From contig NIVC01000905.1 of the NCBI GenBank assembly GCA_002269645.1, positions 310,162 to 374,161 of the forward strand: a stretch of 64,000 nt of DNA, given 5' to 3'. The notes under the pieces are model-generated. The model was not told where the DNA came from and did not search any database. It worked only from the letters and a program-made list of their open reading frames with translations. The position numbers were made by a program, and so were the translations under genes. Source of the DNA: Macrostomum lignano (Eukaryota). Positions 3,851-53,490 of this stretch are shown piece by piece (the first letter of the stretch is position 1; every line of letters begins with the position of its first letter).

Positions 3851-4696
3851 TATTATTTCGGAGATTATTAGTCGAGCTGAACTTAAAGAAACTAAAAAAG
3901 ATAAAAGCAACGAAGAAATATATTTTGAAAGATTTTTGGAGAACTGCCAGTCCGCTCCACCAGCTCACGAATGCTGTCTTCCAAACACTTGATGAAGGTA
4001 CAAATGCAGACAGTCAGAATGGCTACTGGAGAGAATCGGGAATGAATCGAGAGCCTTTTGATAAAGGATCTACACGTAACTTATTTTCATTGCATATTAC
4101 AAGAAGGGATTGAGTAGCTCTACTTGAGAATGGATTGGCTCTCAGGTGTGTGAAAGGAATCGAACCAGTGGTCGTGACCCGACACACTTTACCTTTTTAT
4201 TGTAATTTAAAAAAGATAAAGCTATAGTTTTGTTAAAACGTACTTAAAGTTTTCAGCGTAGAGAATTTTTTATTTGTTTCAAGCATTACGCTCGTAATAG
4301 AGGGATAATTGTAGCATTTTTTTCAGGTTAAAACTTTTCCAGATAGCTGAGTTGTATGCTTACGCTGGATAAAATAAAAACATTGTGAGATCAATTCTCG
4401 GTGAGTCTTACTCAAAGTAGAATTGTGAGAATGTTTCTCAGAATTCGAGAATTAATAATTAAATTTACAGAGACTCGAAATTCAACTTAAAAAATTGAAT
4501 GGCGTTACTTGACCGTATAACTTATCGAACAGTACAACAAAAATTGAAAGAATAACAATTGAAAGTAAATTGAAAGTAAAAAAGTAGATCGCCTCTCATC
4601 ATAAATAGCCTTTTTTCATTGATTACTGGGTGAACCAACCGTAGGCTCCCTGAACCATTGTCACTGACAACCAAACCACACCTGCTACAGTCGAAG

Positions 4697-5451
4697 TCAA
4701 GGCACTGATCCAGCCGCCAGTTGCAGGTTTGCAGTGTCTGAAAATGTTATTCAGTACCTATCTATATATAGCTGCGTATTGAGCTCTCAGCTAACCAACA
4801 GTAACCGACTTACTCAGAATTTGGATGACGGCAGCAGCCGGTCGATTGAGGGCGTGAAGTTCGTCTGAAAGACACAGCATGAAGATCTCCTCATATCAGA
4901 TATTGAAGTAAGTTTGCAGTGAGGAATTCAGGATGAATTAGAGGAACCAGAGGGATGCAATCGGTATGCTGAATGACAGGTTCGACTGATACTGAGAGAT
5001 TCAGAGTGGTTAATGGAGAGTCGGGGTGGCTACTGGAGAGTCGGAGTGGCTACTGGAGAGTCGGAGTGGCTACTGGAGAGTCGGGGTGGCTACTGGAGAG
5101 TCGGGGTGGCTACTGGAGAGTCGGGGTGGCTACTGGAGAGTCGGAGTGGCTACTGCCTACTGGAGAGTCGGGGTGGCTACTGGAGAGTCGGGGTGGCTAC
5201 TGGAGAGTCAGAGTGCTAGGCGGTCAGAATGGCTATTGAAGAATTACAATGGCCTAACACCTGAAAAAATATAGAATACTTTTTAGGGATGCTTCATTGG
5301 TAATGATAATATTTTCGAGACTTACAGCCTTTGGCAATCAGAGCAGTTCTGCACTTGGCAACACTCCATGATGGATGGAAATGGTCCATGAACCTCTCGT
5401 GAGAGTTAGTTGTCAAAGGTAAAAATTCGATTTTGTTGCACTGTACAGGTA
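4697..5451 (-). CDS. Putative 3' exons of an unknown gene
   Basis: Exons 5451-5326, 4864-4814 and 4737-4697 have GT(AAGT)/AG sites in matching phase 1 and read PVQCNKIEF...IAKG-Y-ELHALNRPAAAVIQIL-N-TANLQLAAGSVP*. Upstream exons are unresolved and no homology was recognised. Confidence 0.35.
5015..5210. repeat. 20-bp minisatellite (ACTGGAGAGTCGGGGTGGCT)n
   Basis: About 9 tandem copies seen directly. Confidence 0.95.
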
Positions 5452-7120: not shown

Positions 7121-8375
7121 TTATTTTTTCTCTGATTTTGAAACACCGAAAAGAACAGCTGCTCCAGCTGCTATAAGAACGCCGGAAATAATCTCAAACG
7201 TAGTAGAGTTGGATTCTTGGCCACTGCAGCCTCTGAAAAAATATCGGAACAGACGAGATCCTTTGGGGAAACATACTCGTGTAGAAACGCTCTTGACCTT
7301 TCTTAGAACTTTATTCGTAATTAATGCACTCTATTAAAACAGATCAGATAAAATAGGGGTTGCACGAGGTACATGCAGCCTAGTGGTTAGAACGTCAGAC
7401 TTACGACTGAAAGATCGGGGGTTCGATTCTCGACACCACTCAGAACAATTTATGTCCTTGAGCAAGACACTTAACTCTGCATTCTTGGACTGAACAGCAG
7501 TAAGCAGCCTCTATATCTGAATCGTCTATGGGCAGAATAGCTTCGGCTGAGCTATTATTTGCCCATCTGCTCATAAAGACAGGTGCATATTCAATTATTA
7601 TTATCATTAATTACTAAAACAAATGATCGACTTACCCGTCGGTTGGGTGGCGGCAGCACACATTAGTATAGAGTCTTCTTCTGTCAGAAAAGAAAAAAAA
7701 AATTTTTATTAAATAACAAGTCAAAATATCCTCAATAAAGCGGGAAGGAAGTCGATTGGTAAGTTAATTGGTAAGTCGATTGGTAAGTATCATGCTTTGG
7801 CCCTAATTCAGATAGCGGATATCAGTATGTAACAAGCTGTAGCTACCACAGATACTTGAACACTAGATGGGTCACCTAATGCAAATTCGCTCGATGTCTG
7901 AATAGACTACTCTCTTCTGGGCAAGACTATCGATTTTTGTGCTTCCACGTCAGTGCTATAGTTTAAGCCATAGACAAAAGTTTCAAGCATCGAAATCAAG
8001 CTAACTAGTAAAGGGGTTCATCATGGCTTTCCTTTTAGATTGAAAAATTGATTGAAATTGGTTGATTGATTGATTGATTAAAAAATGAGGCACTGAAATG
8101 TCAACTTTTTTGTCTACATCATAATCTAAATATAAAATAATAAAAATACCCAGTGCCTGCAGCAGCACCTTCCTTCGCTCCAAGCAATCCTATAAACAAA
8201 TTGCGTTAAAATTTATTCACTATGACTATACTGAGACTGAATAAAATTATTAACTTCCGTACTTACCAAAAATGAAGGCAGCACAGATCTCATCCATTCT
8301 ACCTACGTGATTTTAAAAGCATGTATTCTGTCCACCTGCCCCTACTCGTACCTTACACCAAAACTTGCTTTTCAT
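7121..8375 (-). CDS. Small 5-exon Cys-motif/hydrophobic-tail protein, 83 aa
   Basis: Exons 8375-8357, 8302-8267, 8189-8150, 7680-7636 and 7232-7121 are all GT-AG and join in one open frame: MKSKFWCRMDEICAAFIFGLLGAKEGAAAGTGRRLYTNVCCRHPTDGGCSGQESNSTTFEIISGVLIAAGAAVLFGVSKSEKK*. Confidence 0.55.
7366..7610 (+). mobile_element. tRNA-derived SINE, family A (in an intron of the 83-aa gene)
   Basis: CCTAGTGGTTAGAACG A box, GGTTCGATTC B box and GTCCTTGAGCAAGACACTTAACTCT body. Confidence 0.8.
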
Positions 8376-8704
8376 CTGTGCAAACTACAGCCTATGAGTG
8401 TAAAAAACGATTAAGAAATCAATTCAAATCAGAGAACGAGTAATGCCTACTATCAATAGTTTGTCCGTTGGTTGGTTATCAAGCACTGAAATTTGATGAC
8501 AATAAAAGTTTAATTGTAGCAAGGATACCCCCAAGAATCTTAACCAAATGCTGCTAACTTTAACTACCACTGAATCATCTTGTAGAAAGTGCTTTACGAT
8601 TCAACAATGCTTTAGCGTACCTCTCATACTAAATAGTATACCCTCGTATTTTACCACAAATTGGTATTTCTACAGAGTTAAACATTGAGTATTGCTGCTA
8701 ATGA

Positions 8705-11511: not shown

Positions 11512-11685
11512 TCAAATTGACGTCACAGCTTTCTTGACGTCTAGTGCGACAACCGACAGCGCAGCTGCTGCTGCAGCAACCGCAAGAAACAGATGAACTC
11601 TCGAGCTTCCCCAATGTACGCAGCAGCAAAATCCATCTCTCTGGGCCGCTCTGAGTAGTGCACAGATAAAATTGACTGCCTGACT

Positions 11686-14377: not shown

Positions 14378-15150
14378 CTGTGGGGATTAGAGGGATTCTG
14401 TGGGGTTTGAGGGATGCTGTGGGGATTAGAGGGATTCTGTGGGGTTTGAGGGATGCTGTGGGGATTAGAGGGATTCTGTGGGGTTTGAGGGATGCTGTGG
14501 GGATTAGAGGGATTCTGTGGGGTTTGAGGGATGCTGTGGGGATTAGAGGGATTCTGTGGGGTTTGAGGGATGCTGTGGGGATTAGAGGGATTCTGTGGGG
14601 TTTGAGGGATGCTGTGGGGATTAGAGGGATGCTGTGGGGTTTGAGGGATGCTGTGGGGATTAGAGGGATGCTGTGGGGATTAGAGGGATTCTGTGGGGTT
14701 TGAGGGATGCTGTGGGGATTAGAGGGATTCTGTGGGGTTTGAGGGATGCTGTGGGGATTAGAGGGATGCTGTGGGGTTTGAGGGATGCTGTGGGGATTAG
14801 AGGGATTCTGTGGGGTTTGAGGGATGCTGTGGGGATTAGAGGGATGCTGTGGGGTTTGAGGGATGCTGTGGGGATTAGAGGGATGCTGTGGGGTTTGAGG
14901 GATGCTGTGGGGATTAGAGGGATGCTGTGGGGTTTGAGGGATGCTGTGGGGATTAGAGGGATGCTGTGGGGATTAGAGGGATGCTGTGGGGATTAGAGGG
15001 ATGCTGTGGGGATTAGAGGGATGCTCTGGGGATTAGAGGGATTCTGTGGGGTTTGAGGGATGCTGTGGGGATTAGAGGGATTCTGTGGGGTTTGAGGGAT
15101 GCTGTGGGGATTAGAGGGATGCTGTGGGGTTTGAGGGATGCTGTGGGGAT
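14378..15150. repeat. 39-bp minisatellite built from 20+19 bp subunits
   Basis: GGGATTAGAGGGATTCTGTG/GGGTTTGAGGGATGCTGTG units; explains the GIRGILWGLRDAV ORFs. Confidence 0.95.
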
Positions 15151-15227
15151 TTCTTCGGTGCTGAGGATCAGGCACCTCAGCCCGAAGATTCCCCAGCGCC
15201 AGCAGCACCGCCACCCGCTCCCCGCAG

Positions 15228-18437: not shown

Positions 18438-20345
18438 TCAATTCTCGCGCCAAGTGTAAAAGGCGGGACTTTCACCGGCTCTCCGGATTGCTTCACAAAA
18501 GTCTGCTCTGTCATCGTGTCGAGTCTTCCAGAGCGCCAAGACGACTCGAAACCAGCACTCCGCAGCGACCATGTGCCGTTCCCAATTAGTTTGCTGCCAT
18601 GTCTGAGCCCTGGGACTCAGAATCAGAGCCTCAGTTCTGCCGCGAACAATGGCAGCGGCCAGCTGCAGCAGCAGCGAGTGGTCTTCGCCACTGCAGCGGC
18701 CTTCGGAAATTTCTGTGGCAAGAGTCTGCAAAATGTTTTTGTATTCGCCATCAAATGCGTCACCTGTGCAAATTTTTTCAAGCGCATCTTTTCTTGTCTT
18801 GATAAATTTTTTGTCGTTCCAGTCTTTAAAGATAAGTCTAACAGCTTCGTCCTGATAGCGGTGATACTGTTTGTTAAGCCTCTTCAAAACGATTCGTCTT
18901 CCACAGAGGCTCTTATGTTGATGCCGAGTCTGCCTCAGCTGCAGATAGGTCAATCCGCTCTTTGCTTCTGGCTCAAGATCATCACGTGTCTCCATTGGAA
19001 GGTCTTCGCCCCAGATATCGTGCGTTCTTTGCGGATCATCGTCCTCACTGTAGATTTGGCCAAGTCTGCGTAACTTAGGAACAAGAATTGTTAAGCCTTT
19101 CGTGCTCATACGACTACCTGAAATCTCGCGCAACCTGCGAATGACTTCATTGACTACTGGTTCGATTGAGCACCTGGGTTGAAGCGAAACAAAATTTCTT
19201 TTTTTTAGATTACATATTTCAATTATAAATACGGAGAACGGCTCCAGTGGAACTTGGAGGCGTGAAATTGTACATGTTTTTGGCCAAGGCGCCTCTTGTT
19301 GCTTTTTGAAATGAAGCAGCACTTCAAATCGAAAGTCTTTCAGATCAAACGTCTTGAAAAGCTTTGATCCCTCAACTTCCACAACTGCCGCAGCCACCCA
19401 TAGCGGCTTTTTGCGTTCGTTTTCGATCTCAAATTTAAGAGGCTTTTCCCATAAGCCGAACTCACCGCAGTTTCCCCGAAACTCGAAGAATTCGACATCC
19501 CGAAGCTCGCATTCAAAATGCAGCTCAATGTGAGTGACTGCGTACACTCTGGGCTGAGCTTGAGGGTCCAGTTTGATTAGATACGTTTGCGTTGGATTTG
19601 CATAATCGACAGGCAGATTGATGTCGCAAAACTCTGTGAAAGGTACCATAGGCTCTTGAGCTTGAGCTTTCACAACTCTAACTCTCAGAGGCTCTTTGGT
19701 AGGCAGTCTCATGAAGTTGTTATAATTGGCCATTTGCAGATCATCGATCGTCAGCGTCCAGACCTGTGCGTCTCCGTGATCTTGCTTTGCAGCATCGCAT
19801 TGCATGCACTTTGTGCAAACTTTACGAGACTTCTCAAATCGCTTATGGCTATTATGTTCAATTTCAAGCTGAAAATTAGTGTTAAAATTTTCCAACTCCG
19901 TTTGAAATTCGAAGATAAGGCAGATCGGTGCCATCGGAATGACTCGGAAATTGCTATTTGTCAGGTCACAGTAAATAACAAACTCCACCTGTTTGTCCTT
20001 GACAAAGTGAGGCACAAACCGGGTCCCTTCGCCAAACTCTATCTTATAGTCGAGTACTTCCTGTTCCATGGTAGCACTCAGTCGGAATTGCAGAATGTTT
20101 TTGGTTTCGGCTGTCTTGATTTTGCCGTGTTCCGTCACTTTTATATTTTCCAATCTTCTATCGCCGTCAGTATCCAGTTTTGAGTACCATATTTGCTCAC
20201 CTGTTTCAAGTGTCTTTTGTTTCAGTTCGTGCGGCTTAGTCTCCGTGGAATCGTAAATGTTGAGATGAATTCTCGATGCTCGCTCACCGCCCTTTACGAC
20301 AATGTGCAAAACTGCATTCGGTTTTTGTTGTGGCTGCTCTTGCAT
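18438..20345 (-). CDS. Intronless 635-aa protein of unknown function (beta-rich N-terminus, helical C-terminus)
   Basis: A long stop-free ORF with a splice acceptor (CTCTCAG) about 27 nt upstream of the ATG. FRGNCGEFGLWEKPLK...PLWVA weakly resembles CBM20 G-x4-LG-x-W. The C-terminus aligns with the neighbouring 256-aa ORF. Confidence 0.8.
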   Translation of the reverse strand: MQEQPQQKPNAVLHIVVKGGERASRIHLNIYDSTETKPHELKQKTLETGEQIWYSKLDTDGDRRLENIKVTEHGKIKTAETKNILQFRLSATMEQEVLDYKIEFGEGTRFVPHFVKDKQVEFVIYCDLTNSNFRVIPMAPICLIFEFQTELENFNTNFQLEIEHNSHKRFEKSRKVCTKCMQCDAAKQDHGDAQVWTLTIDDLQMANYNNFMRLPTKEPLRVRVVKAQAQEPMVPFTEFCDINLPVDYANPTQTYLIKLDPQAQPRVYAVTHIELHFECELRDVEFFEFRGNCGEFGLWEKPLKFEIENERKKPLWVAAAVVEVEGSKLFKTFDLKDFRFEVLLHFKKQQEAPWPKTCTISRLQVPLEPFSVFIIEICNLKKRNFVSLQPRCSIEPVVNEVIRRLREISGSRMSTKGLTILVPKLRRLGQIYSEDDDPQRTHDIWGEDLPMETRDDLEPEAKSGLTYLQLRQTRHQHKSLCGRRIVLKRLNKQYHRYQDEAVRLIFKDWNDKKFIKTRKDALEKICTGDAFDGEYKNILQTLATEISEGRCSGEDHSLLLQLAAAIVRGRTEALILSPRAQTWQQTNWERHMVAAECWFRVVLALWKTRHDDRADFCEAIRRAGESPAFYTWREN

Positions 20346-21185: not shown

Positions 21186-21956
21186 TCAACTCACAGTCCT
21201 GTTGCCCATACATGCTTTGAACTTCTCAGCCTCGTCCTCAGGCTCGGTCACGACAGTCCTGAGGCGGCTCCACACGGTCACCATGAAGCAGAACCAGGCC
21301 TCCGCCACTGGGCAGCGGTCCCGAGGCTGATCGGTACTCAGTTTCAGGGCTTGCAGGTGACTGCGAACGATTTCAGCTGAGTTCTGAAGCAAGCTTTTCG
21401 CTTCCTCATCTTCAAACGCCCACTCGCCGTCTGCAATGCTGATTGCCAGCTCAGTTACACACAGCTTTTCATCTTCACGGAATTCTTCTTCCGTGAAAAC
21501 TTCACGCAGATTGGCAGGCAGCATCTGCCTAACTGACTGTTTCTTCTCTTCCAAATCAGTGGTCTTCCTCTCTGCCTCATCTGGCATCAAGTACCGAGCG
21601 TAAATGCCTCTGACGCTGTGGTAACTGGTCAGTCTAACTGGCAGGTTGGGAATGCAGCATAGAGAGTACGTTAAGTCTGTGAGCACCGTGTTCTTGTCGA
21701 ATAGGGGGTTGGCTGCAACTTTTTCAACCATATTCGTAGCTGCATTCTTGAAGCCGTAAATACTGCCAGTAGGTTTCGCAAGTTTCCTAAATTTCGTAGA
21801 AACCATGATCTCAGGAATTGGACATTCATCCAAGTGTGACTTCAGATGTGCAGTAGTTGCTGATGATTTTGAAGGCGACTCTGGTGACTTTGACGGTCGT
21901 GTCACAATGGGTTGGAAATGAAGGCTTGGTCCTTGTTCGTCCATCAAGCTTTTCAT
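21186..21956 (-). CDS. 256-aa ORF, paralogue of the 635-aa ORF C-terminus (possibly truncated or frameshifted)
   Basis: LAISIADGEWAFEDEEAKSLLQNSAEIVRSHLQALKLS...AEAWF.F...W aligns with LATEISEGRCSGEDHSLLLQLAAAIVRGRTEALILS...AECWF.V...W. Confidence 0.65.
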   Translation of the reverse strand: MKSLMDEQGPSLHFQPIVTRPSKSPESPSKSSATTAHLKSHLDECPIPEIMVSTKFRKLAKPTGSIYGFKNAATNMVEKVAANPLFDKNTVLTDLTYSLCCIPNLPVRLTSYHSVRGIYARYLMPDEAERKTTDLEEKKQSVRQMLPANLREVFTEEEFREDEKLCVTELAISIADGEWAFEDEEAKSLLQNSAEIVRSHLQALKLSTDQPRDRCPVAEAWFCFMVTVWSRLRTVVTEPEDEAEKFKACMGNRTVS

Positions 21957-24404
21957 CGCTCTGCAGTAGAATTTGTTTGTGATTATCAGATTCGAAGCTT
22001 ACAAGATCGAAAAGCAGAATTTTTCCAAGTGGGAAATGTACGAGGAGGTTTCAATAAGTTTCTGGATGCACAAAGTCTAGACGTAGAAAGATGATGTACT
22101 CAATTTGGAATTAGCTGGGCTGGTTAAAGCAGGTTCTCATTAACTTAAAGTAAGCTCCTAGGTTCGAATATTGCCCACATTAATGTGCTGTTGAAATTGA
22201 TTTTAAAACTGATTTCAACAATCTTTGACCCACGGAAATACGAGCTACTAACGATAATTTGAATCGGCCTGATGAGAGATGAGACCACGAGTTGAATACT
22301 TAATTTAATCTGGGGAGCAAACTCACAACTAGTGAAAATAAATTTAAAAGATAATATTCTCTGATGAAGCCAGCCATGTACCGCTACATTTTAGCTCTTG
22401 TCATTCCTCTGCAGCCCAGACTGGTAGTGCAGTCCTGCTTCAGTTTTCAAACATTTTTGACGATTTCTTTGGCGATATTACAAATCGAATTAATAGGTTT
22501 GACGGGGAAGTGGAAAATTGTGTCCTGAAAGGCCCGTCACAGCAGCTATACCAATTGATCAATAATTCGTCAGCTATGGCGCATGGCACAAAGCTTTAAA
22601 ACTCAAGCCTACACAATGGAGAGTTGTTGGCCATTTCGTCGGTTCGTCGAAGTTGAATGAGCCTCTTACCTTTTACGGATTCGTTTCCTGTATTCGTAAA
22701 AGTTGTTTCTAGCACTCAGGCTTCGTGCTACATACATAGTAAAAATACAAGTCAAGCATGAAATCATAAATTTATAAATATAAGTAGATAGTTTGCTGTT
22801 TTCTGAGCCAAAGAGGAATTTAAATGCTAACACCGATAAAAACTAGCAAGGTGGAACTCGGAAAAGAATCGTAGGATTTGGCGGATGCCATTCTAAAACT
22901 TGATCACGTAAAAATTAATGACATGACTTTTATCCATTCAGAAACTTATGTTTGCACCCTGTACGAGCTATCATCCTGTTCAAAGCGTATTCTAGGGGAA
23001 ATTACCTACTTCAATGGCCTAGCACATCAAAGGCCTACCATCCACTTTCGCGCTGATCCTGACAGCAGCAAAATATCGAAATTCAGCTTTGTGTCAGAAG
23101 GTCACCACCAGTAAAGGCAGGTTCACATGAACTTCCCGTAGTTGGCAGGGTCAAGTATCATCATAAAAATTTATCATAAACTTCATATAGCTCGTACTTG
23201 TAATCCATTTGAACCATCAGGCTATTTTGTGACTATAAGTTGAGGATTTACTATGAGCTCGAGCAAAGTCATAATTACTCATAAAAATACTAAAAACAAT
23301 ACGATCCTATACTCCCTAATGAAGGCTGCTTCCAGCCGCTACATTTTAGCTCTTGTCAGTGTCCTCTGCAGACTTTTATACACTACATGTATAGTGTATC
23401 CTCGTATCTCTAGTAGTGCAGTCTGCAGTCAGTTCTTAGACTCCATGAAACCAAGTGGTTTCAGGAGAAGCAAAATCGTTCTTTAGAATTGGAATCCCTA
23501 GAAGCTGAGAAATGAGAAATTAAAGATAAAAACGGAATTGCCATAACTGAATTAAAGAAAACTTATCGGTGTCGGAGTTCAGAGATCGAATGGGTCTTAA
23601 AGATCTCAAGATTTGGCGGATCCCATTCTGAAACTAACCAAAAATTTTATTACGACTTTCGTTTTTCAGAAATTTATGTTCGCAACTTCTATTCTCTTGT
23701 TTAACGTGTATTTTAGGGGCAATGACGCACCTCCATGGCCTAGCACATCAAAAGCCCACTTTAGTGCCGAACCCGACAGCAGCAAAGTATTGAAATGCAA
23801 TTTTTTGAAAGAACTAACCAGTTAAGGTAGATTCTCATTAACTTCCTGTAGTTTCCTTGTTCAAATTTTTTATACTTTTTATTTATTTATTTATTATACT
23901 AATTTATTTTATTTAATATTTATATTTATTTACTTATTTTTATCTTTAATTGCTCACTTTCATGTACTGTTGAAATTGATTTTTAAAACTAATTTTCTAC
24001 AATCTCTGACCCACGGAACTGCAATTGCTACTAACGATAACTTGAACCGACCGTAACGGAGAGCTTAACGTAGGTATTAGTTTCCTTATAAAACTTCATA
24101 CTTGTAACTCATCTGAACCATGAGACTATTATACTCGTGCGAGACCTTTTTTAATCCTAATCCTAATCCTAATCCTATTAATAAAATAAGACTATTTATT
24201 AAAAATCATTTTCCGTTTTTTCTGGAGTTTTCCTAGCCATTGACCTGAAAGCTGTGGATCCAGCTAGGTTACCCATTGACCTGAATTTGAGAAAAAAGTT
24301 GGCAGTTATAGCTATGATTCATTTGCCCTATATCTGGCAGCTGGAAATAACTAAGCAATGATGATGATGCACTAAATTCATGATGAGTACAATGAGGGGT
24401 ACAG

Positions 24405-24660: not shown

Positions 24661-26805
24661 ATTGCAGTTTTAACTCATCAGAAACTGGGACTTGACAAAA
24701 TGGCTAAGGGAGGATTAAAGGTGATCTTGTGGGTCTGTTCAATCTCGTGGGAGAACTCACCACTTAAGGCAGGTTCTTCCCGTGGCTCTGAGGTTCAAAT
24801 ATTGCTCACATTAATGTGCGTGTTTACTACTTATACGACTAAAATGGTAGACTATTCCATTCTGAATAGTAGACTATTCTACTCGTATAAGACCATGAGT
24901 TAAATATTTACTCTAACCTGGAGCAAAGCCGTAATTACTACTTCTTATATAATCAGCATGTAAAATATATATATATATATATATACTCTCCGATGAAGCC
25001 TGCTACGAGCCAACATCCTCTGCAGCCCATTTTATTGATATTCCGGTAATAGTGCGGCCCTGCTTCAGTTTTTAGACTTCTTTTTGGCAATAGCTCGTAT
25101 AGAACTAGCTAATGAGATAACGGGGCGGTGAAAAATACGCTCGTACCATCCTGAAAACCCGTCACAACAGTTACCAATTGATCAATAATTTACCAGCTAT
25201 CGGGGTGGATGGCACAAAACATTCAAACCTACACAACGTCTTGTATTGAGTGAGCATCGTATAAATCACCGTGCCGCATGGGAATCGAAATCCTCTGATT
25301 CCTCTGAATCCTCTGTAGACTGTATCCTCTGAACATCTCTAGTACTCAAGCTACGCTACTTATAATAAAAAAAACTTGCTAAATGAAGCATGCATTACTC
25401 AAGTTATGAATTTCCATGTAAGTCGATACAAGTAGTTGCTGTGTTCTGAAGCAACGAGGAATTTTAATGACTACTTTGAAGCGCTCATGCGAGTGTATTT
25501 AGCAGCTGGATATCGCTAACATGCTAACACCGATAAAACTAAAAAAATGGAACTCGATCTGAAGCAAAATAAAATCTTACGATTTGACGGATTCCATTCT
25601 GAAACTCACTTTGAATTTTATAGCACATGAACTTAATTCTTTATGAAACTTACGTTCGCACCGTTTCATCTTCTTATTTATTTATTATATATCTCAATAG
25701 TGCAGTCCCGCTTCAGTTTTGTGACCAAATGAAGTCAATTAGTTTCAGAAAAAGCAAAATTGTCTTATAGAATTGGAATGAGCGACATGAGAAATAAGAA
25801 ATGAACGACAAAAACTGAATTACCTGGATGGTATGATGGTACACGTATGGCTTGCTGAAGACCGGTATGCAGAAGCTTGATGGTGTTCGATTGAATAGGT
25901 CTGGATCGATTTGAGCTTTTTGTGCTCCTTTTTTCCCGAACTGTCAGAAGTTTTTGCATCCATAGACCTGCACAGGAAAAGGTGTTGGCAGTTATACGCT
26001 CGTAGTTATCTGTAGGTTCAAAAGACTCAGCCAGGATTTAGTTTCGTGTGGGGGTACAATAAAAATTTTGTTTAATGATGTTGCAAATAAAGCCATAACA
26101 CAAAATGAATGTACAACAAAACTTTTTGGCATGATTGGAAGGGGGCAGGGCCCTGGCTGCGCTATTTAAACATTTCAAGAATTGTGAAAATGTGAAAAAT
26201 GGCGCTAATTTAAAAAATGTCGCAAGTAGCGAGTAAAAGTACAGTACTGTTGACAGTTTTAAAACACACATTAGGATTGGTTTTCCTTCTGGCAGAAAGG
26301 AAAGAAAGGACAGAAAAAATTTAAGAAAAGTCAAAATACGAGTACCTTCAATAGGAAAGAAGTGGATTGATAAGATCAGTATCATGCATTGCCTCTAATT
26401 GAGATACCGAATAGCAGTATGTAGCACTGTAGCTACCGGCAATAAAATCAAATCACTTACACATTCGCACATGCTTTGCAATTTGACTTCTGACAGCACT
26501 GGTTTGCCATTCGATCTTATACGATGGATGATAAAAAATTTCAAGCTTCTTAAGACAGATTCTTAACAATATGCTAGCATCTTTCGCTGTGTCTTGACAC
26601 ATATACGAGCGTATATTCCTTAACCAGGAGCCTGTACCTTGTTCAATTTTTGAGTCCAGCATCATTTTCAGATTTAAACATGGGTCGTTCAAAATCGTAG
26701 CAATAATTTTTAGAAATTTTGGCACACAATTTATAATATACAAATGAGACAGGCAGTCATTATGCATGATCGAACATCCTTTCGGGTTACTTACTTTTTG
26801 AGGTA

Positions 26806-29236: not shown

Positions 29237-29876
29237 TCAAAGGCTGTATTTGACCCAGTTGGCTCCAGTCTCGATCCACTGCTCCACCTGAGCATCCGTG
29301 AACAGCAGCAGACGGCACTTGTTCGTCTTGGTGTTGTACAACACGCGCCTCGCGCTTCGATCAGCAGTCGCGGCCATTATGCACTGCGCCAGGGTGTCCA
29401 CCGGGACATCCTTGAAGCAGTACTTGCCGCTCGGGTTGTAGCTGGTCCGCCTAAACTCAGTCTGCTTCCATTTGGCCTTGCAGAAATCCACCGCTGGTGA
29501 CGCCTCCGGGTCCACGTACTCGCAGACGAATCCGCGCAAGTTCGAGCAGTCATTATCAATGAATTTCACTGTGTACGAGGAGCTGGCGATGCAGTCTTGG
29601 TTGCCAACGCTGCTAGGCATGCCAGTGTACCACAGAAGATTGGCTTAGAAGTATCTCTACTTCGTGTCTTACGGGACTCTTATAGTGTCATATATGACTC
29701 AAACAATCAATATACCGCAAGCCTGTCACAGGAATGTTTTGTTAAGTTAAAAGAACTTTTGAAACCGAAAAAATCTGCAGCAAATTATTTTTAGTTTTTA
29801 TGGTGAAGTATTGTTCTAGGCAATTCGAACGTACGCTCGTAGCTAGTGACTCACCAGGTACAACCGTGTTTTGACC
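29237..29876 (-). CDS. C-type lectin plus PAN/Apple-like protein, 3' part
   Basis: Exon 29643-29237 reads NLLWYTGMPSSVGNQDC...DNDCSNLRGFVCEY (CTLD W..G.P...DC / C...FVCE), then C-x-x-A...LYN....KCRL (PAN-like). A 22-nt micro-exon 29876-29855 (GQNTVVP) joins in phase. The 5' exons were not found. Confidence 0.7.
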
Positions 29877-29975: not shown

Positions 29976-30725
29976 ATGAGTCAGTGCTGTGAAGTGGAAA
30001 ATTGTAAAGATTGCCAGATGGCGTAAGTGAATTTCAATTTTTCGAATTCAAACTTATTGGCTATTAGTCACATAATTAACTCGTAGCTGTTTCATTGCTG
30101 GCTGCCCCAGAATCAAATGCAATCTTTGATTTTGTGATGAAAAAACATTTTCCGTCTCCACGGTGCATTAGCCTTCAAAAATTGCACGAACTTGGAGTTT
30201 TTACGTCATGTTATACTACAGTGGGTCGGTCCTTGTCTCAGAGGGGGCATACATGAGTTGATCATTTGATTTGGCACTTTCTTAGCACAATAGTAAAAAT
30301 TAATTACTTCCGATGTAGTATGGTAGAAATGATACCTCTCAGAGAATTCCTAGATAAATGATTGAAAAAGCAGTATCTGATGCTCTATGATATTGTCGTT
30401 GTTCGTTTCTAAACACTCTCTCCAGACAGCCCCTCTGCGGCAAACGACAGTGTTGTAAGCACACGGATGGGAGGTACGAAGCCAATTTGTTGCCGTGTTG
30501 GATGCGTTTAACCTTTTATCACTCTTTTTTAATATCACAATTATTTATTTTACTATTTCACTAAGGGACTGCGAGGACCAGACGGTGTCGCAGGGCTGCG
30601 ATAGAGTTGGCATTGCTCTGGCTGCTGGAGGGGTGACCTTCGTTGGAGCCGTCGTGCTCGGGTCCTCAACTTTCGGTCTTGGAGCGGCGCTGGTTGTTGC
30701 TGGATTTGTCGCTTGTGTCCGATGA
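29976..30725 (+). CDS. Small 3-exon Cys-rich protein with a Gly-rich hydrophobic C-terminus, 84 aa
   Basis: Exons 29976-30022 (GTAAGT donor), 30426-30473 and 30566-30725, both introns phase 2, give MSQCCEVENCKDCQMAQPLCGKRQCCKHTDGRDCEDQTVSQGCDRVGIALAAGGVTFVGAVVLGSSTFGLGAALVVAGFVACVR*. Confidence 0.7.
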
Positions 30726-32489: not shown

Positions 32490-36777
<4,288 letters not shown>

Positions 36778-39276: not shown

Positions 39277-42200
39277 TTGAGGCCCCTGGTTGTTTGCCTT
39301 GCAAACGAAAGTGACAAAGCAGCTTTCTTCGGCAACCTAAAAAACCTGCGGGAAACTGGTTCTGCCTATCAAAGAGTCAGAATAGAGAACGACCTAACAG
39401 AGAAGGAACGTACGTACAAGCAGAAGGTCATCAAAGAGCTGAAAAAACGGAAAGAAGATGGTGAGAAAAACATTCGAATTGCATATAAGAAGGGAGTCCC
39501 CTTCATCAAAGCTTTTTGAACTTCATTGACTTCCGACCTTTTTGATACTAGATGTATTAATAAATCTACTGATGCTAATAGGACTAAAAAGAAGCGGATT
39601 CAGTACACTAGAGATTATCTTATCTTGATTAATAATAGTATCACTCATAGGAACATAAAAATATCTCAAAATGCTAAATCAAAACTCTCTGAACTCAATA
39701 TTAAAAAGATTAAACAAAATTTCACAATTAGCAGTTGGAATATTACAGGACTTTATACTATAAAAGACTCAGTGATGATTCCCAAGCTTGAATTGTTAGA
39801 AGCTGAACCAATTTTTAAGCATGATATTTTCTGCCTTCAAGAAACTTGGATAATTGACACAAAAAGCAATGATAGGCTTCTCAGCACTGACAAATTGCGT
39901 GACAACTACACAATTTTCCAAAAGTCTGCAAACAAAAAAGGAAGCAGTTCTACTGGTAGGGCATCTGGCGGCCTACTGACTGCTTATAAAAAATCACTAG
40001 AAACACACTTCAATGTGACTGAGTCATTCAATAATTACAACAATTTTTTGACATTAAACTTTAAAAACAAAAAGGACAAAAGCAAAAATTTCACTGTTAT
40101 CAACTCTTACATACCACCAACATCTTCAAAATACTATGAAGAAGAGTCTTGGGAACAGTTAGCACTAATACTTGATGCACATCATTCTGAAGAAAACATA
40201 ATCCTGGTGGGAGATTTTAATGCACATACTTACAATACTGATCATATAGATTTGCATAGAATAAGCACTTTAAAGGCAAAAAATATCTCACTCTATAGGC
40301 AAAGCCAAGACAAAAAAACCTGTAAAAGTGGTAGATTATTAAACCAAATCACAAACTCATATAACTTGCATATAATCAATGGTAGATCCCTATCTGATGC
40401 AACTGGAACACTTACCTTTATCTCCAAAACTGGTTCATCTGTAATTGACCTCTGTTTTGTCTCTAGCAACTTACTTGAGCACTTTGAAGACTTTAAAGTA
40501 AGAAACCATACTTACCTTAGTGACCACAATCAAATTATACTCTCATTATCATGTAAATTCACAGCAGAGATTACAGAAACAAAACAAGCAACCAATAACC
40601 AAAGAACAAAATTCCGGATATTAAGAAAACTAGATAAACCCACCCCACAACAAGAAAAACATATCAATTGCTTCTCAGATGATCTAAAGGATCTGGAGAA
40701 TAAAATCCCAAATCTCGACATGCAAAACCCAGCTTTCATCCATAATTTAAGCAAGAAAGTTCAGCAAATCCAAAGTAAAATCACAGTAGAAACAAAAAAC
40801 CCTCTCTGTTCAGCATTGCCACAATTTCTTAAAGACCTGAGAAATGCCACCAGGCATGCCAGCAGAAGATATAAGATGTTCCCCACAAGTAGCAACCTCG
40901 CATCCAAAATACAGCTTAAAAAAACATATGAAAAAAGCTTGATTTCTTGGAAACATGAATCAATACTGTGTGCAGAAAACATGATCAACCAGGCTTATAT
41001 TCAAAATGATACAAGACAGCTTTGGCAATTACTGAAACCACATAACCGCCCCAATAACAATGCAGCAATTGACAAAAAATTTGTCATACACTTTCAAAAT
41101 CTTGTAACTGAACAAGACAGCAGCATTAGACTAGCATACAATCTTCACCTTGACAACCCTATTCTGACTAATTTAGAGGATTTCAATGCCCCATTCACCA
41201 AAGAAGAAGTTATAAAACATATTAAAAAGCTCAAAACCGACAAAGCACCTGGGCATGATAAAGTATATGTAGAAACACTCAAATACCTTGAAAACGAACT
41301 TACTGACCTCCTATGCTCACTTTTCAACGAAGCACTCAAACAAGGAACCTTTCCAACTAGTTGGATTACAAATACTCTTCATCCGATTTATAAAAACAAA
41401 GGCAGCAGTGCCGACCCCAACAATTACAGAGGAATCTGCATTCAACCAATTTTTGGCAAGCTCTTTTGCCAAATTATTAAATCCAGACTTGAAAACCTAG
41501 CATACGCTAACAATCTTATATCAAAATACCAATACGGTTTCAAGCCCAATCACAGCACAATCGACCAATGTTTTAATCTTTACAACATTATAAACCAGTC
41601 CATCTACAACAAAAATGAACTCTTTATCGGTTTTGTTGACTATGAAAAAGCCTTCGATAGCTTAAATCAACCGACCCTTTGGCACAAAACGGATAACCAA
41701 GGTATTAAAGGTCAAATGACAGAACTTATCAAGAACATGCATAAAAATGCCTGTTTCATTCTAAAGAAAGATGATGATGATGATGAAACCCAGCCAATCC
41801 CAATATCTAAAGGTGTTCTTCAAGGTAACCCTCTCTCTACCATCCTTTTTGAACTATATATTGACGACATTGTTGAATATCTTGAACTCTCTAGCGCTAG
41901 GCGCTCTCTTACGAGATCTGCTTTCCCACTCATCCTGCTCTTTGCGGACGATCAAGCCATTCTAGCTAAAAACAAAGATGAACTTCAAGACACATTTACA
42001 ACTATGGAAAATTACTGCAAGCAAAACTACTTGAAAGTTAATGCAAGCAAAACAAAGTTTATGCAGGGCAGTACCAGACAAAAAAATGACACCGAAAGTT
42101 TTGCTACAAAAATAATCTACGACAACCAAGAAATAGAGGAAGTAAATGAATTTAAATACCTGGGAATTATTTTTGAACCAAAAAACAGCTTTAAAAAATG

Positions 42201-43540
42201 TATTGAACATCAAACTAAGCAGGGTTATTCAGCTATGTTTTCCCTACTCCACAAGGTAAAAAATACGTCCCTGGACATCACACTCATCCGCAGACTATTC
42301 GACGCGCTTGTCACCCCCGTTATCACGTACGGCTGTGAGCTCTGGGGCCCTCTGGCTACCATTTCTGAAACAAAAGCTATTGATAACATTCAGCTGAAAT
42401 TCTACAAATATCTCCTCAATCTACCAAAATTTGCTAGCAACAGTGTGATATCATCAGAACTTGAGCTTACTCCAATCTCCCAACGAATTGCTAAAACCTA
42501 TCTTACCTACTGGCTGAAGATTAGACATCAAAAACTTTGCCAAACGACACTAGAAATTTTCTACTCAAACACCAGCCAAAAAAATCCATGGAAAACAAAT
42601 ATACTAAAGAAACTGGAAAGTATAGACTTAAAAGCACTAACTGAAGATAAACTTTCCCAAAGCTTTAATAACGAGAAATACCTAGTGAAAAAGCACCTCA
42701 AGATACACAGAGAAAGAGAACTTAGCCAAAAGCTAGAGAATCAGCAACATATTAAACTCTATAAAAACGCCTATCTCTACAAAAAAATCTGCAGGCCTGA
42801 CCTTTCAGATTACTTTCCATGCACTTTTAGAAACAAAAAATTCCTAACAACCCTCCTAAAACTGAAATGCGAAATTACACCCAACATTTTCTCTCATGAA
42901 CCATGTAGACTGTGTGGAGCGAGAAATGGTTCCGATATCCTACACTACTTGACCGAATGTCCACAAACCGAAAAGTTCAGAAAAAATACTTCTGTCAGTA
43001 CCTCCTAAATGACAAGCAAGTACACAAGTTAGGATATGCTACAAATGAAAAAAGAGTCAGAAAAGAGCTCACTGGTGTAGCTAAAATATATGAAGTCATG
43101 AATAGCTAAAACAGTTATGCAAACTGAAACAGACATATCAGCAGTGAAATAAATCCGCCTTTCCCATTTTTAATTTCCTACTTAATTAGCACTTAATTAG
43201 TATTTAATTAGTTTCCTATCTAATACCTATTTAAATCGTCGTCATTCGCTTAACGTAAAGTCCCTTCGAAGTTCGTTTTTGTTCATTTTTCTTTCGTTTT
43301 TACTTTTATTAACTGCAATACTTTTTTTAACTCCTTGCTTTTTCTTTCGCTTCGTTAGTCGTCCAAGTATCGTTAATAACTTTTCCGCGTTCTTTCAAAT
43401 ACCATTTTGCAAAACCCGTACTAATCATAATTAAATAACTAGTGCTAAAATATTGTCTCCTATTCCTGAAGCAATCTTAAATACATAGAAATATATTGGC
43501 CAAACAGGCTTCTTGCCTGAGCCAACTTACTACTACTAAA
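39277..43540 (+). mobile_element. 5'-truncated non-LTR retrotransposon (CR1/L2-group-like): ORF1 tail, ORF2 and 3' UTR
   Basis: The ORF1 end (39277-39519, RPLVV...VRIENDLT.KER) is followed by ORF2, then a 3' stem-loop TTGGC-caaa-CAGGC-ttctt-GCCTG-a-GCCAA (43496-43525) and a (TAC)n tail. Confidence 0.92.
39526..43008 (+). CDS. LINE ORF2: APE endonuclease plus reverse transcriptase, 1160 aa
   Basis: Endonuclease motifs SWN, CLQETW, YIPP, GDFNAH, IDLCF and SDH; RT motifs KAPGHD, NYRGI, QYGFK, FVDYEKAFDS, GVLQG..LS..LF.LYID, LLFADD and FKYLG; C-terminal C-x2-C-x8-H-x4-C. A 1-nt frameshift near 42980 removes the last about 40 codons. Confidence 0.95.
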   Translation: MTSDLFDTRCINKSTDANRTKKKRIQYTRDYLILINNSITHRNIKISQNAKSKLSELNIKKIKQNFTISSWNITGLYTIKDSVMIPKLELLEAEPIFKHDIFCLQETWIIDTKSNDRLLSTDKLRDNYTIFQKSANKKGSSSTGRASGGLLTAYKKSLETHFNVTESFNNYNNFLTLNFKNKKDKSKNFTVINSYIPPTSSKYYEEESWEQLALILDAHHSEENIILVGDFNAHTYNTDHIDLHRISTLKAKNISLYRQSQDKKTCKSGRLLNQITNSYNLHIINGRSLSDATGTLTFISKTGSSVIDLCFVSSNLLEHFEDFKVRNHTYLSDHNQIILSLSCKFTAEITETKQATNNQRTKFRILRKLDKPTPQQEKHINCFSDDLKDLENKIPNLDMQNPAFIHNLSKKVQQIQSKITVETKNPLCSALPQFLKDLRNATRHASRRYKMFPTSSNLASKIQLKKTYEKSLISWKHESILCAENMINQAYIQNDTRQLWQLLKPHNRPNNNAAIDKKFVIHFQNLVTEQDSSIRLAYNLHLDNPILTNLEDFNAPFTKEEVIKHIKKLKTDKAPGHDKVYVETLKYLENELTDLLCSLFNEALKQGTFPTSWITNTLHPIYKNKGSSADPNNYRGICIQPIFGKLFCQIIKSRLENLAYANNLISKYQYGFKPNHSTIDQCFNLYNIINQSIYNKNELFIGFVDYEKAFDSLNQPTLWHKTDNQGIKGQMTELIKNMHKNACFILKKDDDDDETQPIPISKGVLQGNPLSTILFELYIDDIVEYLELSSARRSLTRSAFPLILLFADDQAILAKNKDELQDTFTTMENYCKQNYLKVNASKTKFMQGSTRQKNDTESFATKIIYDNQEIEEVNEFKYLGIIFEPKNSFKKCIEHQTKQGYSAMFSLLHKVKNTSLDITLIRRLFDALVTPVITYGCELWGPLATISETKAIDNIQLKFYKYLLNLPKFASNSVISSELELTPISQRIAKTYLTYWLKIRHQKLCQTTLEIFYSNTSQKNPWKTNILKKLESIDLKALTEDKLSQSFNNEKYLVKKHLKIHRERELSQKLENQQHIKLYKNAYLYKKICRPDLSDYFPCTFRNKKFLTTLLKLKCEITPNIFSHEPCRLCGARNGSDILHYLTECPQTEKFRKNTSVSTS

Positions 43541-47440: not shown

Positions 47441-52052
<4,612 letters not shown>

Positions 52053-52539: not shown

Positions 52540-53490
52540 GTTGCTGGCCCAGCCTCACAGATCCCCAGTTGCTGGGCCAGCCTCCCAGATCCTCAGTTGC
52601 TGGGCCAGCCTCCCAGATCCTCAGTTGCTGGGCCAGCCTCACAGATCCTCAGTTGCTGGGCCAGCCTCCCAGATCCTCAGTTTCTGGGCCAGCCTCCCAG
52701 ATCCTCAGTTGCTGGGCCAGCCTCCCAGATGCTCGGTTGCTGGGCCAGCCTCCCAGATCCTCAGTTGCTGGGCCAGCCTCCCAGATCCTCAGTTGCTGGG
52801 CCAGCCTCCCAGATCCTCAGTTTCTGGGCCAGCCTCCCAGATCCTCAGTTGCTGGGCCAGCCTCCCAGATGCTCGGTTGCTGGGCCAGCCTCCCAGATCC
52901 TCAGTTGCTTTGCCAGCCTCCCAGATCCTCAGTTGCTGGGCCAGCCTCCCAGATCCTCAGTTACTGGGCCAGCCTCCCAGATCCTCAGTTGCTGGGCCAG
53001 CCTCCCAGATCCTCAGTTACTGGGCCAGCCTCCCAGATCCTCAGTTGCTGGGCCAGCCTCCCAGATCCTCAGTTGCTGGGCCAGCCTCCCAGATCCTCAG
53101 TTGCTGGGCCAGCCTCCCAGATCCTCAGTTGCTGGGCCAGCCTCCCAGATGCTCGGTTGCTGGGCCAGCCTCCCAGATGCTCGGTTGCTGGGCCAGCCTC
53201 CCAGATCCTCAGTTGCTTTGCCAGCCTCCCAGATCCTCAGTTGCTGGGCCAGCCTCCCAGATCCTCAGCTGCTGGGCCAGCCTCCCAGATCCTCAGTTGC
53301 TGGGCCAGCCTCCCAGATCCTCAGTTGCTGGGCCAGCCTCCCAGATCCTCAGTTACTGGGCCAGCCTCCCAGATCCTCAGTTGCTGGGCCAGCCTCCCAG
53401 ATCCTCAGTTGCTGGGCCAGCCTCCCAGATCCTCAGTTGCTGAGCCAGCCTCCCAGATCCTCAGCTGCTGAGCCAGCCTCCCAGATTTTC
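52540..53490. repeat. 28-bp minisatellite (GGGCCAGCCTCCCAGATCCTCAGTTGCT)n
   Basis: About 33 copies; explains three overlapping 300-aa ORFs. Confidence 0.97.

What the first reader, a model, noticed from the sequence alone, without database searches (positions are those of the whole stretch)
29976..30725. 84-aa protein: metallothionein-like Cys N-terminus fused to a Gly-zipper-like hydrophobic hairpin
There are nine Cys (CC, CxxC, CC) in the first 43 residues and no signal peptide. These are followed by about 38 hydrophobic Gly/Ala-rich residues (GIALAAGG...GAVVLG...GLGAALVVAG) long enough for two membrane passes, ending in C-V-R. Three exons join with matching phase-2 introns. The exon structure and CC[KR]H..DG motif match the 7-8 kb gene. 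Possible roles include a metal-binding or palmitoylated membrane microprotein or a pore-forming peptide; this is the clearest member of an apparently undescribed family.
Basis: partly seen in the sequence, partly recalled or inferred. Interest (0 to 1): 0.72.

Follow-up and report, generated by a model that had tools for sequence, protein, structure and literature searches.

The report
Orphan Cys-rich membrane-anchored flatworm microproteins
A small three-exon gene in a Macrostomum flatworm genome encodes an 84-residue protein with a cysteine-packed head and a greasy membrane-anchoring tail; it belongs to a small local gene family that shows signs of selection but matches nothing described so far, and its function and expression are still untested.

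Summary
Exons 29976-30022, 30426-30473 and 30566-30725 (+) join through GT..AG, phase-2 introns into a 255-nt ORF. It encodes 84 aa with nine Cys in residues 1-43, no N-terminal hydrophobic segment and a 39-residue hydrophobic tail ending CVR. The window comes from a Macrostomum flatworm close to, but probably not, M. lignano. Three paralogs lie in the same window: B (5369-4623, -) is intact, C lacks exon 1, and D is decayed after exon 1. Both intron positions and phases are identical in all copies. Paralog differences fall mainly on third codon positions (40 against 23 and 23), and all six conserved Cys codons switch between TGC and TGT while staying Cys. This is therefore a real coding family under constraint. 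No relative was found in Pfam, 5.8 billion and 1.84 billion protein sets, PDB sequences or JGI metagenomes. Metallothionein, glycine-zipper, CYSTM and tetraspanin membership all fail. A sub-threshold tetraspanin hit is confined to paralog B. The best reading is a post-translationally inserted, C-terminally anchored microprotein whose cytosolic head carries two four-ligand Cys/His clusters, probably for metal binding and possibly S-acylated. Expression and function could not be tested here.

The parts
29976..30022 (+). Gene A exon 1: ATG plus first Cys cluster (MSQCCEVENCKDCQM, split codon GC|A). Ends in a phase-2 GTAAGT donor. An in-frame TAA lies 4 codons upstream of the ATG.
30023..30425 (+). 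Gene A intron 1, 403 nt, GT..AG, phase 2, GC 0.37
30426..30473 (+). Gene A exon 2 (48 nt, symmetric phase 2/2): QPLCGKRQCCKHTDG plus split codon; carries the conserved CC[KR]H
30474..30565 (+). Gene A intron 2, 92 nt, GTACGA..AAG, phase 2, GC 0.30
30566..30725 (+). Gene A exon 3: conserved Cys34, linker, 39-residue hydrophobic tail (46-84), Cys82, stop TGA; GC 0.61
4623..5369 (-). Paralog B, intact three-exon gene (exons 5369-5326, 4864-4814, 4737-4623; introns 461 and 76 nt, both phase 2). 69 aa: MECCQVQNCSDCQRLRTSRPQSTGCCRHPNSEHCKPATGGWISALTSTVAGVVWLSVTMVQGAYGWFTQ
7121..7680 (-). Paralog C, exons 2-3 only (7680-7636, 7232-7121; intron 403 nt, phase 2): RRLYTNVCCRHPTDG|GCSGQESNSTTFEIISGVLIAAGAAVLFGVSKSEKK*. 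The stretch aligned to D's exon 1 (about 7850-7900) has lost the ATG, the Cys codons and the donor.
26265..26510 (-). Paralog D: intact exon 1 (26510-26461, MANQCCQKSNCKACAN+GT, GTAAGT donor). Intron 1 and the first half of exon 2 are homologous to C (about 79%). It diverges after ...AATGTGTG, so no CC[KR]H and no family exon 3: a decayed or partial copy.

Best explanation
Gene A is a genuine protein-coding member of a small gene family that looks restricted to Macrostomum and evolves by gene birth and death. It encodes C-terminally anchored membrane microproteins. Shown: three exons with exactly conserved intron positions and phases. The head carries two four-ligand Cys/His clusters: CC-x4-C-x2-C on exon 1, and CC-x-H-x5-C across the exon 2/3 junction. 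There is no N-terminal signal, and a hydrophobic helix lies within a few residues of the C-terminus. Inferred: at 69-84 residues the hydrophobic segment is still inside the ribosome when translation ends. The protein would therefore be inserted after translation, like a tail-anchored protein, with the Cys/His head in the reducing cytosol. There the eight conserved ligands (7 Cys + 1 His) most plausibly hold two Zn(II) ions or a small metal-thiolate cluster at the membrane surface. The N-terminal M-x-CC pair and Cys82 are candidate S-acylation sites. In A the anchor carries a second, A-specific hydrophobic segment (65-84), so it may form a helical hairpin with both ends on the same side of the membrane.
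For: The gene model is exact. The exon-1 motif occurs three times against 0 in shuffles, always with a phase-2 GTAAGT donor. Intron positions are identical in A, B, C and D: CxxC + 2 residues + split codon, and CC + 5 residues + split codon + 1 residue + Cys. Coding constraint is visible: paralog differences by codon position are 23/23/40, 6 of 6 conserved Cys columns vary TGC/TGT but never leave Cys, His is CAC/CAT and Arg is CGT/CGC. Amino-acid identity in the annotated frame is 0.54 and 0.46 against 0.19-0.36 in the other frames. A's exons have GC 0.43-0.61 against 0.30-0.37 in its introns. Each copy has its own start: an ATG 1-3 codons before CC in all three exon-1 copies, in-frame stops just upstream in A and D, no polypyrimidine tract before the AG next to TGYTGY, and no upstream TM-type exons. 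Invariant columns in the alignment are C25, C26, H28, C34, G47, A52, G59 and S65. The only hydrophobic block is C-terminal, and AlphaFold predicts helices at 43-61 and 71-83, at low confidence. A conserved His among an odd number (7) of conserved Cys fits metal ligation better than an all-disulfide fold (inference).
Against: No expression evidence of any kind could be obtained. No ortholog was found, so constraint rests on 2 intact and 2 partial paralogs within a single window. The four M. lignano loci examined hold no family member, though synteny with them covers only window 15.0-21.7 kb. Two of the four copies are degenerate, so the family is at least partly decaying. AlphaFold confidence is poor (pLDDT 49.5). 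Charge distribution argues against a cytosolic head in copy C: its N-flank is acidic, its tail is SKSEKK, and an NST sequon lies next to the helix, all of which favour head-out, tail-in. Adjacent Cys-Cys pairs are unusual in classical zinc fingers. Metal binding, acylation and topology are all inferred.
Confidence: 0.4

Rival explanations
1. The head faces the outside or the lumen and is disulfide-bonded: a miniature ectodomain held by one helix, possibly descended from the Cys-rich variable region plus TM4 of a tetraspanin.
For: Paralog B gives a Pfam Tetraspanin match (E 7.8e-4, 19.6 bits) with residues 1-60 on profile positions 141-213 of 225. Five full shuffles of B give no hit, and the best of five Cys-fixed shuffles gives only 10.4 bits. 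The Cys order CC-C-C-CC-C(-GC) followed by a helix resembles the 8-Cys tetraspanin loop pattern CCG-C-C-PxxCC-C-GC (PMC2965184, Table 1). In copy C the flanking charges (acidic before the helix, SKSEKK after it) and an NST sequon favour head-out. A possible alternative 5' exon pair for C (8297-8267, 8190-8151) would be in frame and would add a hydrophobic, signal-like N-terminus.
Against: The hit is below Pfam's cutoff (32.1) and confined to B. A, C, a D-exon1+C-exon2-3 chimera and single-helix versions of A give nothing at E<=10. The family profile and B alone find no solved tetraspanin at E<=10, although CD81, CD9, CD53, TSPAN7 and TSPAN15 are in that set. The CCG glycine, [DN][WY] and the Pro of PxxCC are absent. 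No TM1-TM3 exons lie upstream. A and B have no signal peptide, and proteins this short cannot engage co-translational targeting. The number of conserved Cys is odd and includes a conserved His.
Confidence: 0.15
2. The cysteines are lipid-attachment sites rather than metal ligands: a multiply S-palmitoylated 'cysteine-string' head lying flat on the cytosolic face of the membrane, organising membrane microdomains or trafficking.
For: All three exon-1 copies have a CC pair 1-3 residues after the start Met, as in proteins known to be doubly palmitoylated at an N-terminal Cys pair (GAP-43-type; from general knowledge). A membrane anchor would bring the cysteines close to membrane-bound acyltransferases. 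Cys82 sits at the end of A's hydrophobic segment.
Against: The strictly conserved His and the fixed spacings (C-x2-C; CC-x-H-x5-C) are not expected for acylation sites, which tolerate positional drift. The head is acidic and polar rather than basic or hydrophobic around most of its Cys.
Confidence: 0.15
3. The locus is not a functional gene: it is an untranscribed or decaying relic of a once-coding family, and the intact ORF in A is residual.
For: Two of four copies are visibly degenerate. No homolog exists in any protein collection, including the annotated M. lignano proteins that are in it. None lies in the syntenic or paralogous M. lignano loci. There is no canonical AATAAA in the 200 nt after the stop. 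No expression data are available.
Against: A and B keep intact ORFs, start codons, four good splice sites each and all conserved Cys/His. Meanwhile their introns have diverged beyond alignment and synonymous sites are heavily substituted, which is not expected without purifying selection. The collections evidently lack this species, since its 635-aa neighbour ORF is also absent.
Confidence: 0.2
4. It is a pore-forming or membrane-disrupting peptide whose Gly/Ala-rich hairpin oligomerises through glycine-zipper packing.
For: A's tail is rich in Gly, Ala and Val and has seven small-xxx-small pairs. Two helices are predicted at low confidence.
Against: No GxxxGxxxG is present, and no glycine-zipper Pfam family matches the tail at E<=10. 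The second helix is specific to A and is not a duplication of the first. B and C have a single, different helix, so the hairpin is not the conserved feature of the family. There is no secretion signal.
Confidence: 0.05

Closest known systems
Tail-anchored (C-terminally anchored) membrane proteins, as a biogenesis class
   Same: No signal peptide. A single hydrophobic segment lies within a few residues of the C-terminus (1 residue after it in A, about 4-8 in B, 6 in C). The total length is too short for co-translational targeting.
   Different: This is a topological class, not a homologous family. A's anchor is about 39 residues long, which could make a hairpin rather than a single span. Insertion pathway and orientation are untested.
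CYSTM (cysteine-rich transmembrane module, Pfam PF12734) tail-anchored stress proteins
   Same: Small eukaryotic proteins, cysteine-rich, with a C-terminal membrane anchor.
   Different: In CYSTM the cysteines sit inside the TM helix and the head is Pro/Gln/Tyr-rich. Here the cysteines are in the soluble head and the helix has 0-1 Cys. There is no Pfam match.
Metallothioneins
   Same: High Cys density (9 of 43 residues), CC and CxxC motifs, no aromatic residues in the head, and a low-confidence (probably metal-dependent) fold.
   Different: No metallothionein Pfam family matches at E<=10. Cys make up about 21% rather than about 30%. There is a conserved His, a membrane anchor and fixed two-cluster spacing split across exons.
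Tetraspanin large extracellular loop (variable region) plus TM4
   Same: The order of cysteines (CC...C...C...CC...C) is followed closely by a TM helix, with a Cys near the helix end in A. Paralog B scores 19.6 bits on Pfam PF00335 positions 141-213.
   Different: There is one (or two) hydrophobic segments instead of four. CCG, [DN][WY] and PxxCC are absent. The score is below threshold and confined to one paralog. No solved tetraspanin is matched.
Glycine-zipper membrane peptides (Pfam Gly-zipper families, GxxxGxxxG)
   Same: A's anchor is Gly/Ala-rich, with small-xxx-small pairs.
   Different: There is no GxxxGxxxG register and no Pfam match. The feature is not conserved in B or C.

Membership tests
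Tetraspanin (PF00335) | Four transmembrane helices | tested here: not met
   Only a C-terminal hydrophobic block is present. No TM-type exons lie upstream of A, B, C or D on the same strand. In-frame stops sit just upstream of the ATG in A and D.
Tetraspanin (PF00335) | CCG signature and further conserved Cys motifs ([DN][WY], PxxCC, GC) in the large loop (PMC2965184, PMC2278132) | tested here: not met
   The copies read CCE, CCQ and CCQ instead of CCG. There is no [DN][WY], and no Pro precedes the second CC (KRQCC, STGCC, TNVCC). GC is present in A and C only.
Tetraspanin (PF00335) | Score at or above Pfam's gathering threshold (32.1 bits) | tested here: not met
   B scores 19.6 bits. A, C, the D+C chimera and truncated A give no hit at E<=10. 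A Cys-fixed shuffle of B reaches 10.4 bits.
Metallothionein (Pfam metallothionein families) | Match to a metallothionein profile; about 30% Cys in CxC/CC/CxxC arrays; metal-thiolate clusters | tested here: not met
   The head alone (residues 1-45) and the full protein give no Pfam match at E<=10. Cys are 21% of the head. Metal binding cannot be tested with these tools.
Glycine-zipper membrane domains (Gly-zipper_Omp/YMGG/OmpA, Rick_17kDa_Anti) | (G/A/S)xxxGxxxG register and a profile match | tested here: not met
   No GxxxGxxxG is present. The tail alone (44-84) gives no Pfam family at E<=10.
CYSTM (PF12734) | Cys-rich C-terminal TM helix and a profile match | tested here: not met
   There is no Pfam match. 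The helix holds 0-1 Cys.
Tail-anchored protein class | No signal peptide; single TM segment within about 30 residues of the C-terminus | tested here: met
   The hydropathy profiles of A and C, and more weakly B (maximum KD15 1.57), show only a C-terminal hydrophobic block.
Tail-anchored protein class | Post-translational insertion with a cytosolic N-terminus | not testable with these tools
   This needs in vitro insertion, protease-protection or glycosylation-tag assays.
The local family itself (A, B, C, D) | Exon-1 M-x(1-3)-CC-x4-C-x2-C with a phase-2 donor two codons after CxxC; symmetric exon 2 with CC[KR]H; phase-2 intron in the 6th codon after CC; Cys two codons later; C-terminal helix | tested here: met
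   A and B meet all of these. C meets the exon 2-3 features and D meets the exon 1 features.

The most novel reading that the evidence does not exclude
A flatworm-restricted class of membrane-tethered metal-thiolate microproteins. Each of two four-ligand Cys/His clusters is encoded by its own exon. Exon 2 is symmetric (phase 2/2, 45-51 nt), so skipping it would give in-frame one-cluster isoforms. The clusters would sit on a tail anchor or hairpin, giving a membrane-bound counterpart of metallothioneins for buffering or sensing metal or redox state at an organelle or plasma-membrane surface.
Probability: 0.15. Interest if true: 0.6.

Novelty: new variant of a known kind. Interest (0 to 1): 0.38.

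Why it matters
If the gene is expressed, this family would be an unannotated, taxonomically restricted set of membrane microproteins in Macrostomum, a laboratory model genus for regeneration, stem cells and reproduction. Gene finders and protein databases routinely miss proteins of this size: none of the 5.8 or 1.84 billion sequences searched resembles it. A membrane-anchored module with two Cys/His clusters would be a compact new way to place metal- or redox-reactive thiols at a membrane. The tandem intact and decayed copies also give a small, tractable example of birth-and-death evolution of microprotein genes. If it is not expressed, it is an ordinary decaying orphan.

Tried and rejected
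2. The neighbouring 635-aa ORF is not on record either, so the source assembly is not in the collection.
3. The synteny route failed on both sides.
   - M. lignano loci around the homologs of the 635-aa ORF are colinear with the window only over 15.0-21.7 kb and contain no family member.
   - The last homolog search, on the first exon of the convergent neighbour gene, found nothing.
4. A full tblastx of loci against the window timed out because of simple repeats.
5. The tetraspanin idea was followed through shuffles, upstream-exon scans, PDB profile searches, literature motifs and a chimera test, and was rejected as a membership claim.
6. Animal tetraspanin intron phases could not be obtained from the papers read, so the intron-position comparison was not done.
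8. The AlphaFold model was too poor (pLDDT 49.5, pTM 0.22) to justify a fold search, so none was run.
9. Internal duplication as the origin of A's long tail was rejected.
10. Extra CC.H hits at 8164, 8283, 11625, 12152 and 14087 (-) were not accepted as family members. About 4-5 such hits are expected by chance, and none has the family's exon structure.
11. The Rfam scan of the window found nothing.
12. The JGI metagenome scan with the family alignment found nothing.

Full report
**What is there**

- Exons are 29976-30022, 30426-30473 and 30566-30725 on the + strand, 255 nt in all.
- Intron 1 is 403 nt (GTAAGT...CTCTCCAG) and intron 2 is 92 nt (GTACGA...CACTAAG). Both are phase 2.
- The product is 84 aa: MSQCCEVENCKDCQMAQPLCGKRQCCKHTDGRDCEDQTVSQGCDRVGIALAAGGVTFVGAVVLGSSTFGLGAALVVAGFVACVR.
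- Nine Cys lie in residues 1-43, and a tenth (Cys82) lies near the end.
- The only hydrophobic block spans residues 46-84, so there is no signal peptide.
- The only AG in intron 2 other than the acceptor lies 4-5 nt after the donor, so the exon-3 boundary is unambiguous.
- Exons are GC-richer (0.43, 0.58, 0.61) than introns (0.37, 0.30) and flanks (0.36, 0.26).
- The locus is single-copy in the window at DNA level.

**Source organism**

The window is animal DNA.
- V-ATPase subunit A exons at about 48.9-52.05 kb are closest to the vertebrate subunit.
- A 635-aa ORF at 18438-20345 (-) is 79%, 60% and 60% identical to three hypothetical proteins of the flatworm Macrostomum lignano.
- The window is colinear with M. 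lignano scaffold NIVC01000095.1 (locus L001) over 15.0-21.7 kb at 81-92% DNA identity, non-coding DNA and minisatellites included.
- M. lignano's own subgenome copies differ by only about 2% at small scale (PMC10733133, read).
- The window is therefore most likely from another, closely related Macrostomum species. Neither the 635-aa ORF nor anything else from this assembly is in the public gene index.

**A local gene family**

The exon-1 pattern M-x(0-4)-CC-x(2-5)-C-x2-C occurs three times in the window (29976 +, 5369 -, 26510 -) and never in 30 shuffles. Each time a GTAAGT donor follows in phase 2.
- **Paralog B** (exons 5369-5326, 4864-4814, 4737-4623, -) is an intact 69-aa gene of the same design.
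- **Paralog C** has exons 2 and 3 (7680-7636, 7232-7121)...NVCCRHPTDG|GCSGQESNSTTFEIISGVLIAAGAAVLFGVSKSEKK*. The DNA aligned to D's exon 1 has lost the ATG, the Cys codons and the donor.
- **Paralog D** has an intact exon 1 (26510-26461). It shares intron 1 and the first half of exon 2 with C at about 79% identity, then diverges.
- Both intron positions are identical to the codon in all copies. The first falls at CxxC + 2 residues + split codon. The second falls at CC + 5 residues + split codon, then one residue, then Cys.
- Exon 2 is always a multiple of three (48, 51 and 45 nt).

**Is it coding and constrained?**

The introns of A and B no longer align, yet the reading frame is preserved.
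- Over the aligned cores of exons 1 and 2, paralog differences by codon position are 23, 23 and 40.
- All six conserved Cys columns alternate TGC/TGT without ever leaving Cys. His is CAC/CAT and Arg is CGT/CGC.
- Mean amino-acid identity is 0.54 and 0.46 in the annotated frame, against 0.19-0.36 in the other frames.
- Each exon-1 copy keeps an ATG 1-3 codons before CC.
- A and D have in-frame stops 3-4 codons upstream of the ATG.
- The AG immediately before TGYTGY lacks the polypyrimidine tract that every accepted acceptor in these genes has.

These are therefore stand-alone small genes, not the 3' ends of larger ones. Scans for hydrophobic exons upstream of every copy found none. I put the probability that A is, or recently was, a real coding gene at about 0.75-0.8. 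That it is expressed today remains unproven.

**Comparison with what is known**

No relative was found in any search:
- Pfam for the full protein, the head alone or the tail alone, even at E<=10;
- the 5.8-billion-protein word-indexed search at E<=1;
- the exhaustive phmmer search of 1.84 billion representatives at E<=0.001;
- PDB sequences, apart from low-complexity RecA and alcohol dehydrogenase noise;
- the JGI metagenome scan.

Short queries need roughly 45 bits or more to be significant in such databases. Paralog-level similarity (A against B is 35% identical) would therefore be invisible, and only close orthologs are excluded. Metallothionein, glycine-zipper and CYSTM membership are not met. 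There is no GxxxGxxxG in the tail, and the Gly spacing is mostly five.

**The tetraspanin lead**

Paralog B alone scores 19.6 bits (E 7.8e-4, cutoff 32.1) on Pfam Tetraspanin. Its residues 1-60 align to profile positions 141-213 of 225, which is the Cys-rich loop plus TM4.
- For the lead: five composition-preserving shuffles give nothing, and five Cys-position-preserving shuffles give one 10.4-bit hit at the same place. About half the score is therefore Cys spacing.
- For the lead: the Cys order resembles the 8-Cys tetraspanin loop pattern CCG-C-C-PxxCC-C-GC (PMC2965184).
- Against: the signature Gly, [DN][WY] and Pro are absent.
- Against: A, C, a D-exon1+C-exon2-3 chimera and single-helix versions of A give no hit.
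- Against: the family profile finds none of the solved tetraspanins at E<=10.
- Against: no TM1-3 exons exist upstream.

I reject membership. Remote derivation stays as a low-probability rival.

**Anatomy and likely mechanism**

The invariant positions in the A/B/C alignment are C25, C26, H28, C34, G47, A52, G59 and S65. Exon 1 adds CC-x4-C-x2-C, shared by A, B and D.
- The conserved head therefore offers eight potential ligands in two groups of four: CC...CxxC on exon 1, and CC-x-H...C across exons 2/3.
- The conserved anchor is a single helix. A's first half (46-64) resembles C's helix (p about 0.02).
- A's second half (65-84) is an A-specific extension, not an internal duplication.
- AlphaFold gives only a low-confidence model (pLDDT 49.5) with helices at 43-61 and 71-83.

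The following is inference.
- At 69-84 residues the hydrophobic segment cannot leave the ribosome before termination, so insertion should be post-translational (tail-anchor-like) with the head in the cytosol.
- A conserved His within an odd number of conserved Cys then points to metal coordination, either two Zn sites or a small thiolate cluster.
- S-acylation of the N-terminal CC pair and of Cys82 is possible.
- Counter-evidence comes from copy C: its acidic N-flank, SKSEKK tail and NST sequon would favour a head-out orientation.
- None of this can be settled without experiments.

**Verdict**

This is a real, apparently undescribed, lineage-restricted microprotein family, and A and B are its intact members. 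'Metallothionein-like' and 'Gly-zipper-like' are compositional analogies, the hairpin is peculiar to A, and function and expression are unknown. Orphan small genes are common in flatworm genomes, so interest is moderate.

Noticed in passing
window 48860-52052 (+): Exons of the V-type ATPase catalytic subunit A gene. The last exon, 51621-52052, scores 198 bits against human and rat subunit A. The introns are filled with (ATCT)n-like and (TGTC)n microsatellites (49173-49533, 50161-50780).
   Followed up: partly
window 39526-43008 (+): An intact 1160-aa ORF of a non-LTR retrotransposon with apurinic-type endonuclease and reverse transcriptase domains (Pfam Exo_endo_phos, RVT_1). It is markedly AT-rich (GC 0.30-0.36) compared with its surroundings. 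A further RT-like fragment near 26.8-27.5 kb matches L001 2664-2999.
   Followed up: partly
window 18438-20345 (-) and 21186-21956 (-): A 635-aa single-exon ORF with no Pfam domain, 79/60/60% identical to three M. lignano hypothetical proteins (BOX15_Mlig021936g1, 031750g1, 033770g2). The 256-aa ORF upstream of it is homologous to the called M. lignano gene next to those paralogs. This appears to be a conserved Macrostomum-specific gene pair of unknown function.
   Followed up: partly
window 32500-36777 (-): A convergent neighbour gene. Its first exon, 36229-36777, has an N-terminal hydrophobic segment. Exons near 35.1 and 34.1 kb look cupin/JmjC-like by eye, but Pfam did not confirm this. An exon at 32706-32906 carries a TPR repeat (TPR_17, E 5.7e-6). 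Its introns hold an 805-bp (TAC)n array and a 692-bp 15-mer minisatellite. A search with the first exon found no homolog.
   Followed up: partly
window 29240-29644 (-): An open segment only about 330 nt upstream of gene A on the opposite strand: ...WYTGMPSSVGNQDCIASSSYTVKFIDNDCSNLRGFVCEY... followed by a C...C...C...C pattern. By eye it looks like the end of a C-type lectin domain plus a PAN/apple-like module. Pfam gave no supporting hit. If its upstream exons lie beyond 30.7 kb, gene A would be nested in its intron.
   Followed up: partly
window 8151-8297 (-), 11512-11640 (-), 12617-13033 (-), 14087 (-): Recurrent CC(C).H(F)W-type strings: GRCCCRHW, DLCCLHFW, GFCCCVHW...HLFLAVAAAAAALSVVALDVKKAVTSI* and PCCVHFW. 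Also a DNA duplication, 8253-8510 similar to 12617-13033. Exons 8297-8267 and 8190-8151 would join in frame (phase 2) to paralog C's exon 2, giving MDEICAAFIFGLLGAKEGAAAGTG + C. It is unclear whether this is a second gene type or chance.
   Followed up: partly
window 7374-7483, 3581-3686, 51395-51501; L002 2-208: A short interspersed repeat of about 107 nt at 84-87% identity, also present in M. lignano loci. One copy lies in intron 2 of paralog C. It contains a tRNA T-arm-like GGTTCGATTC motif by eye, but Rfam at gathering threshold reported nothing.
   Followed up: no
window 58642-62600; 52540-53496; 14378-15151; 56530-58150: Very large simple repeats: about 4 kb of (GATA)n, a 28-bp minisatellite (34 copies), a 39-bp minisatellite and a 36-bp minisatellite (45 copies). 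The 28-bp and 39-bp arrays are shared with M. lignano loci at about 89-92% identity (L001 17791-18542, L001 13771-13857).
   Followed up: partly
window 22425-23650 and 25149-25824: A segmental duplication (70-80% identity) of the 5' part of the gene lying upstream of the 635-aa ORF. Pieces match the called M. lignano gene at L004 5167-9442. Paralog D's exon 1 sits just upstream of the second copy and would join in frame to its first coding exon (about 25.97-25.82 kb).
   Followed up: no
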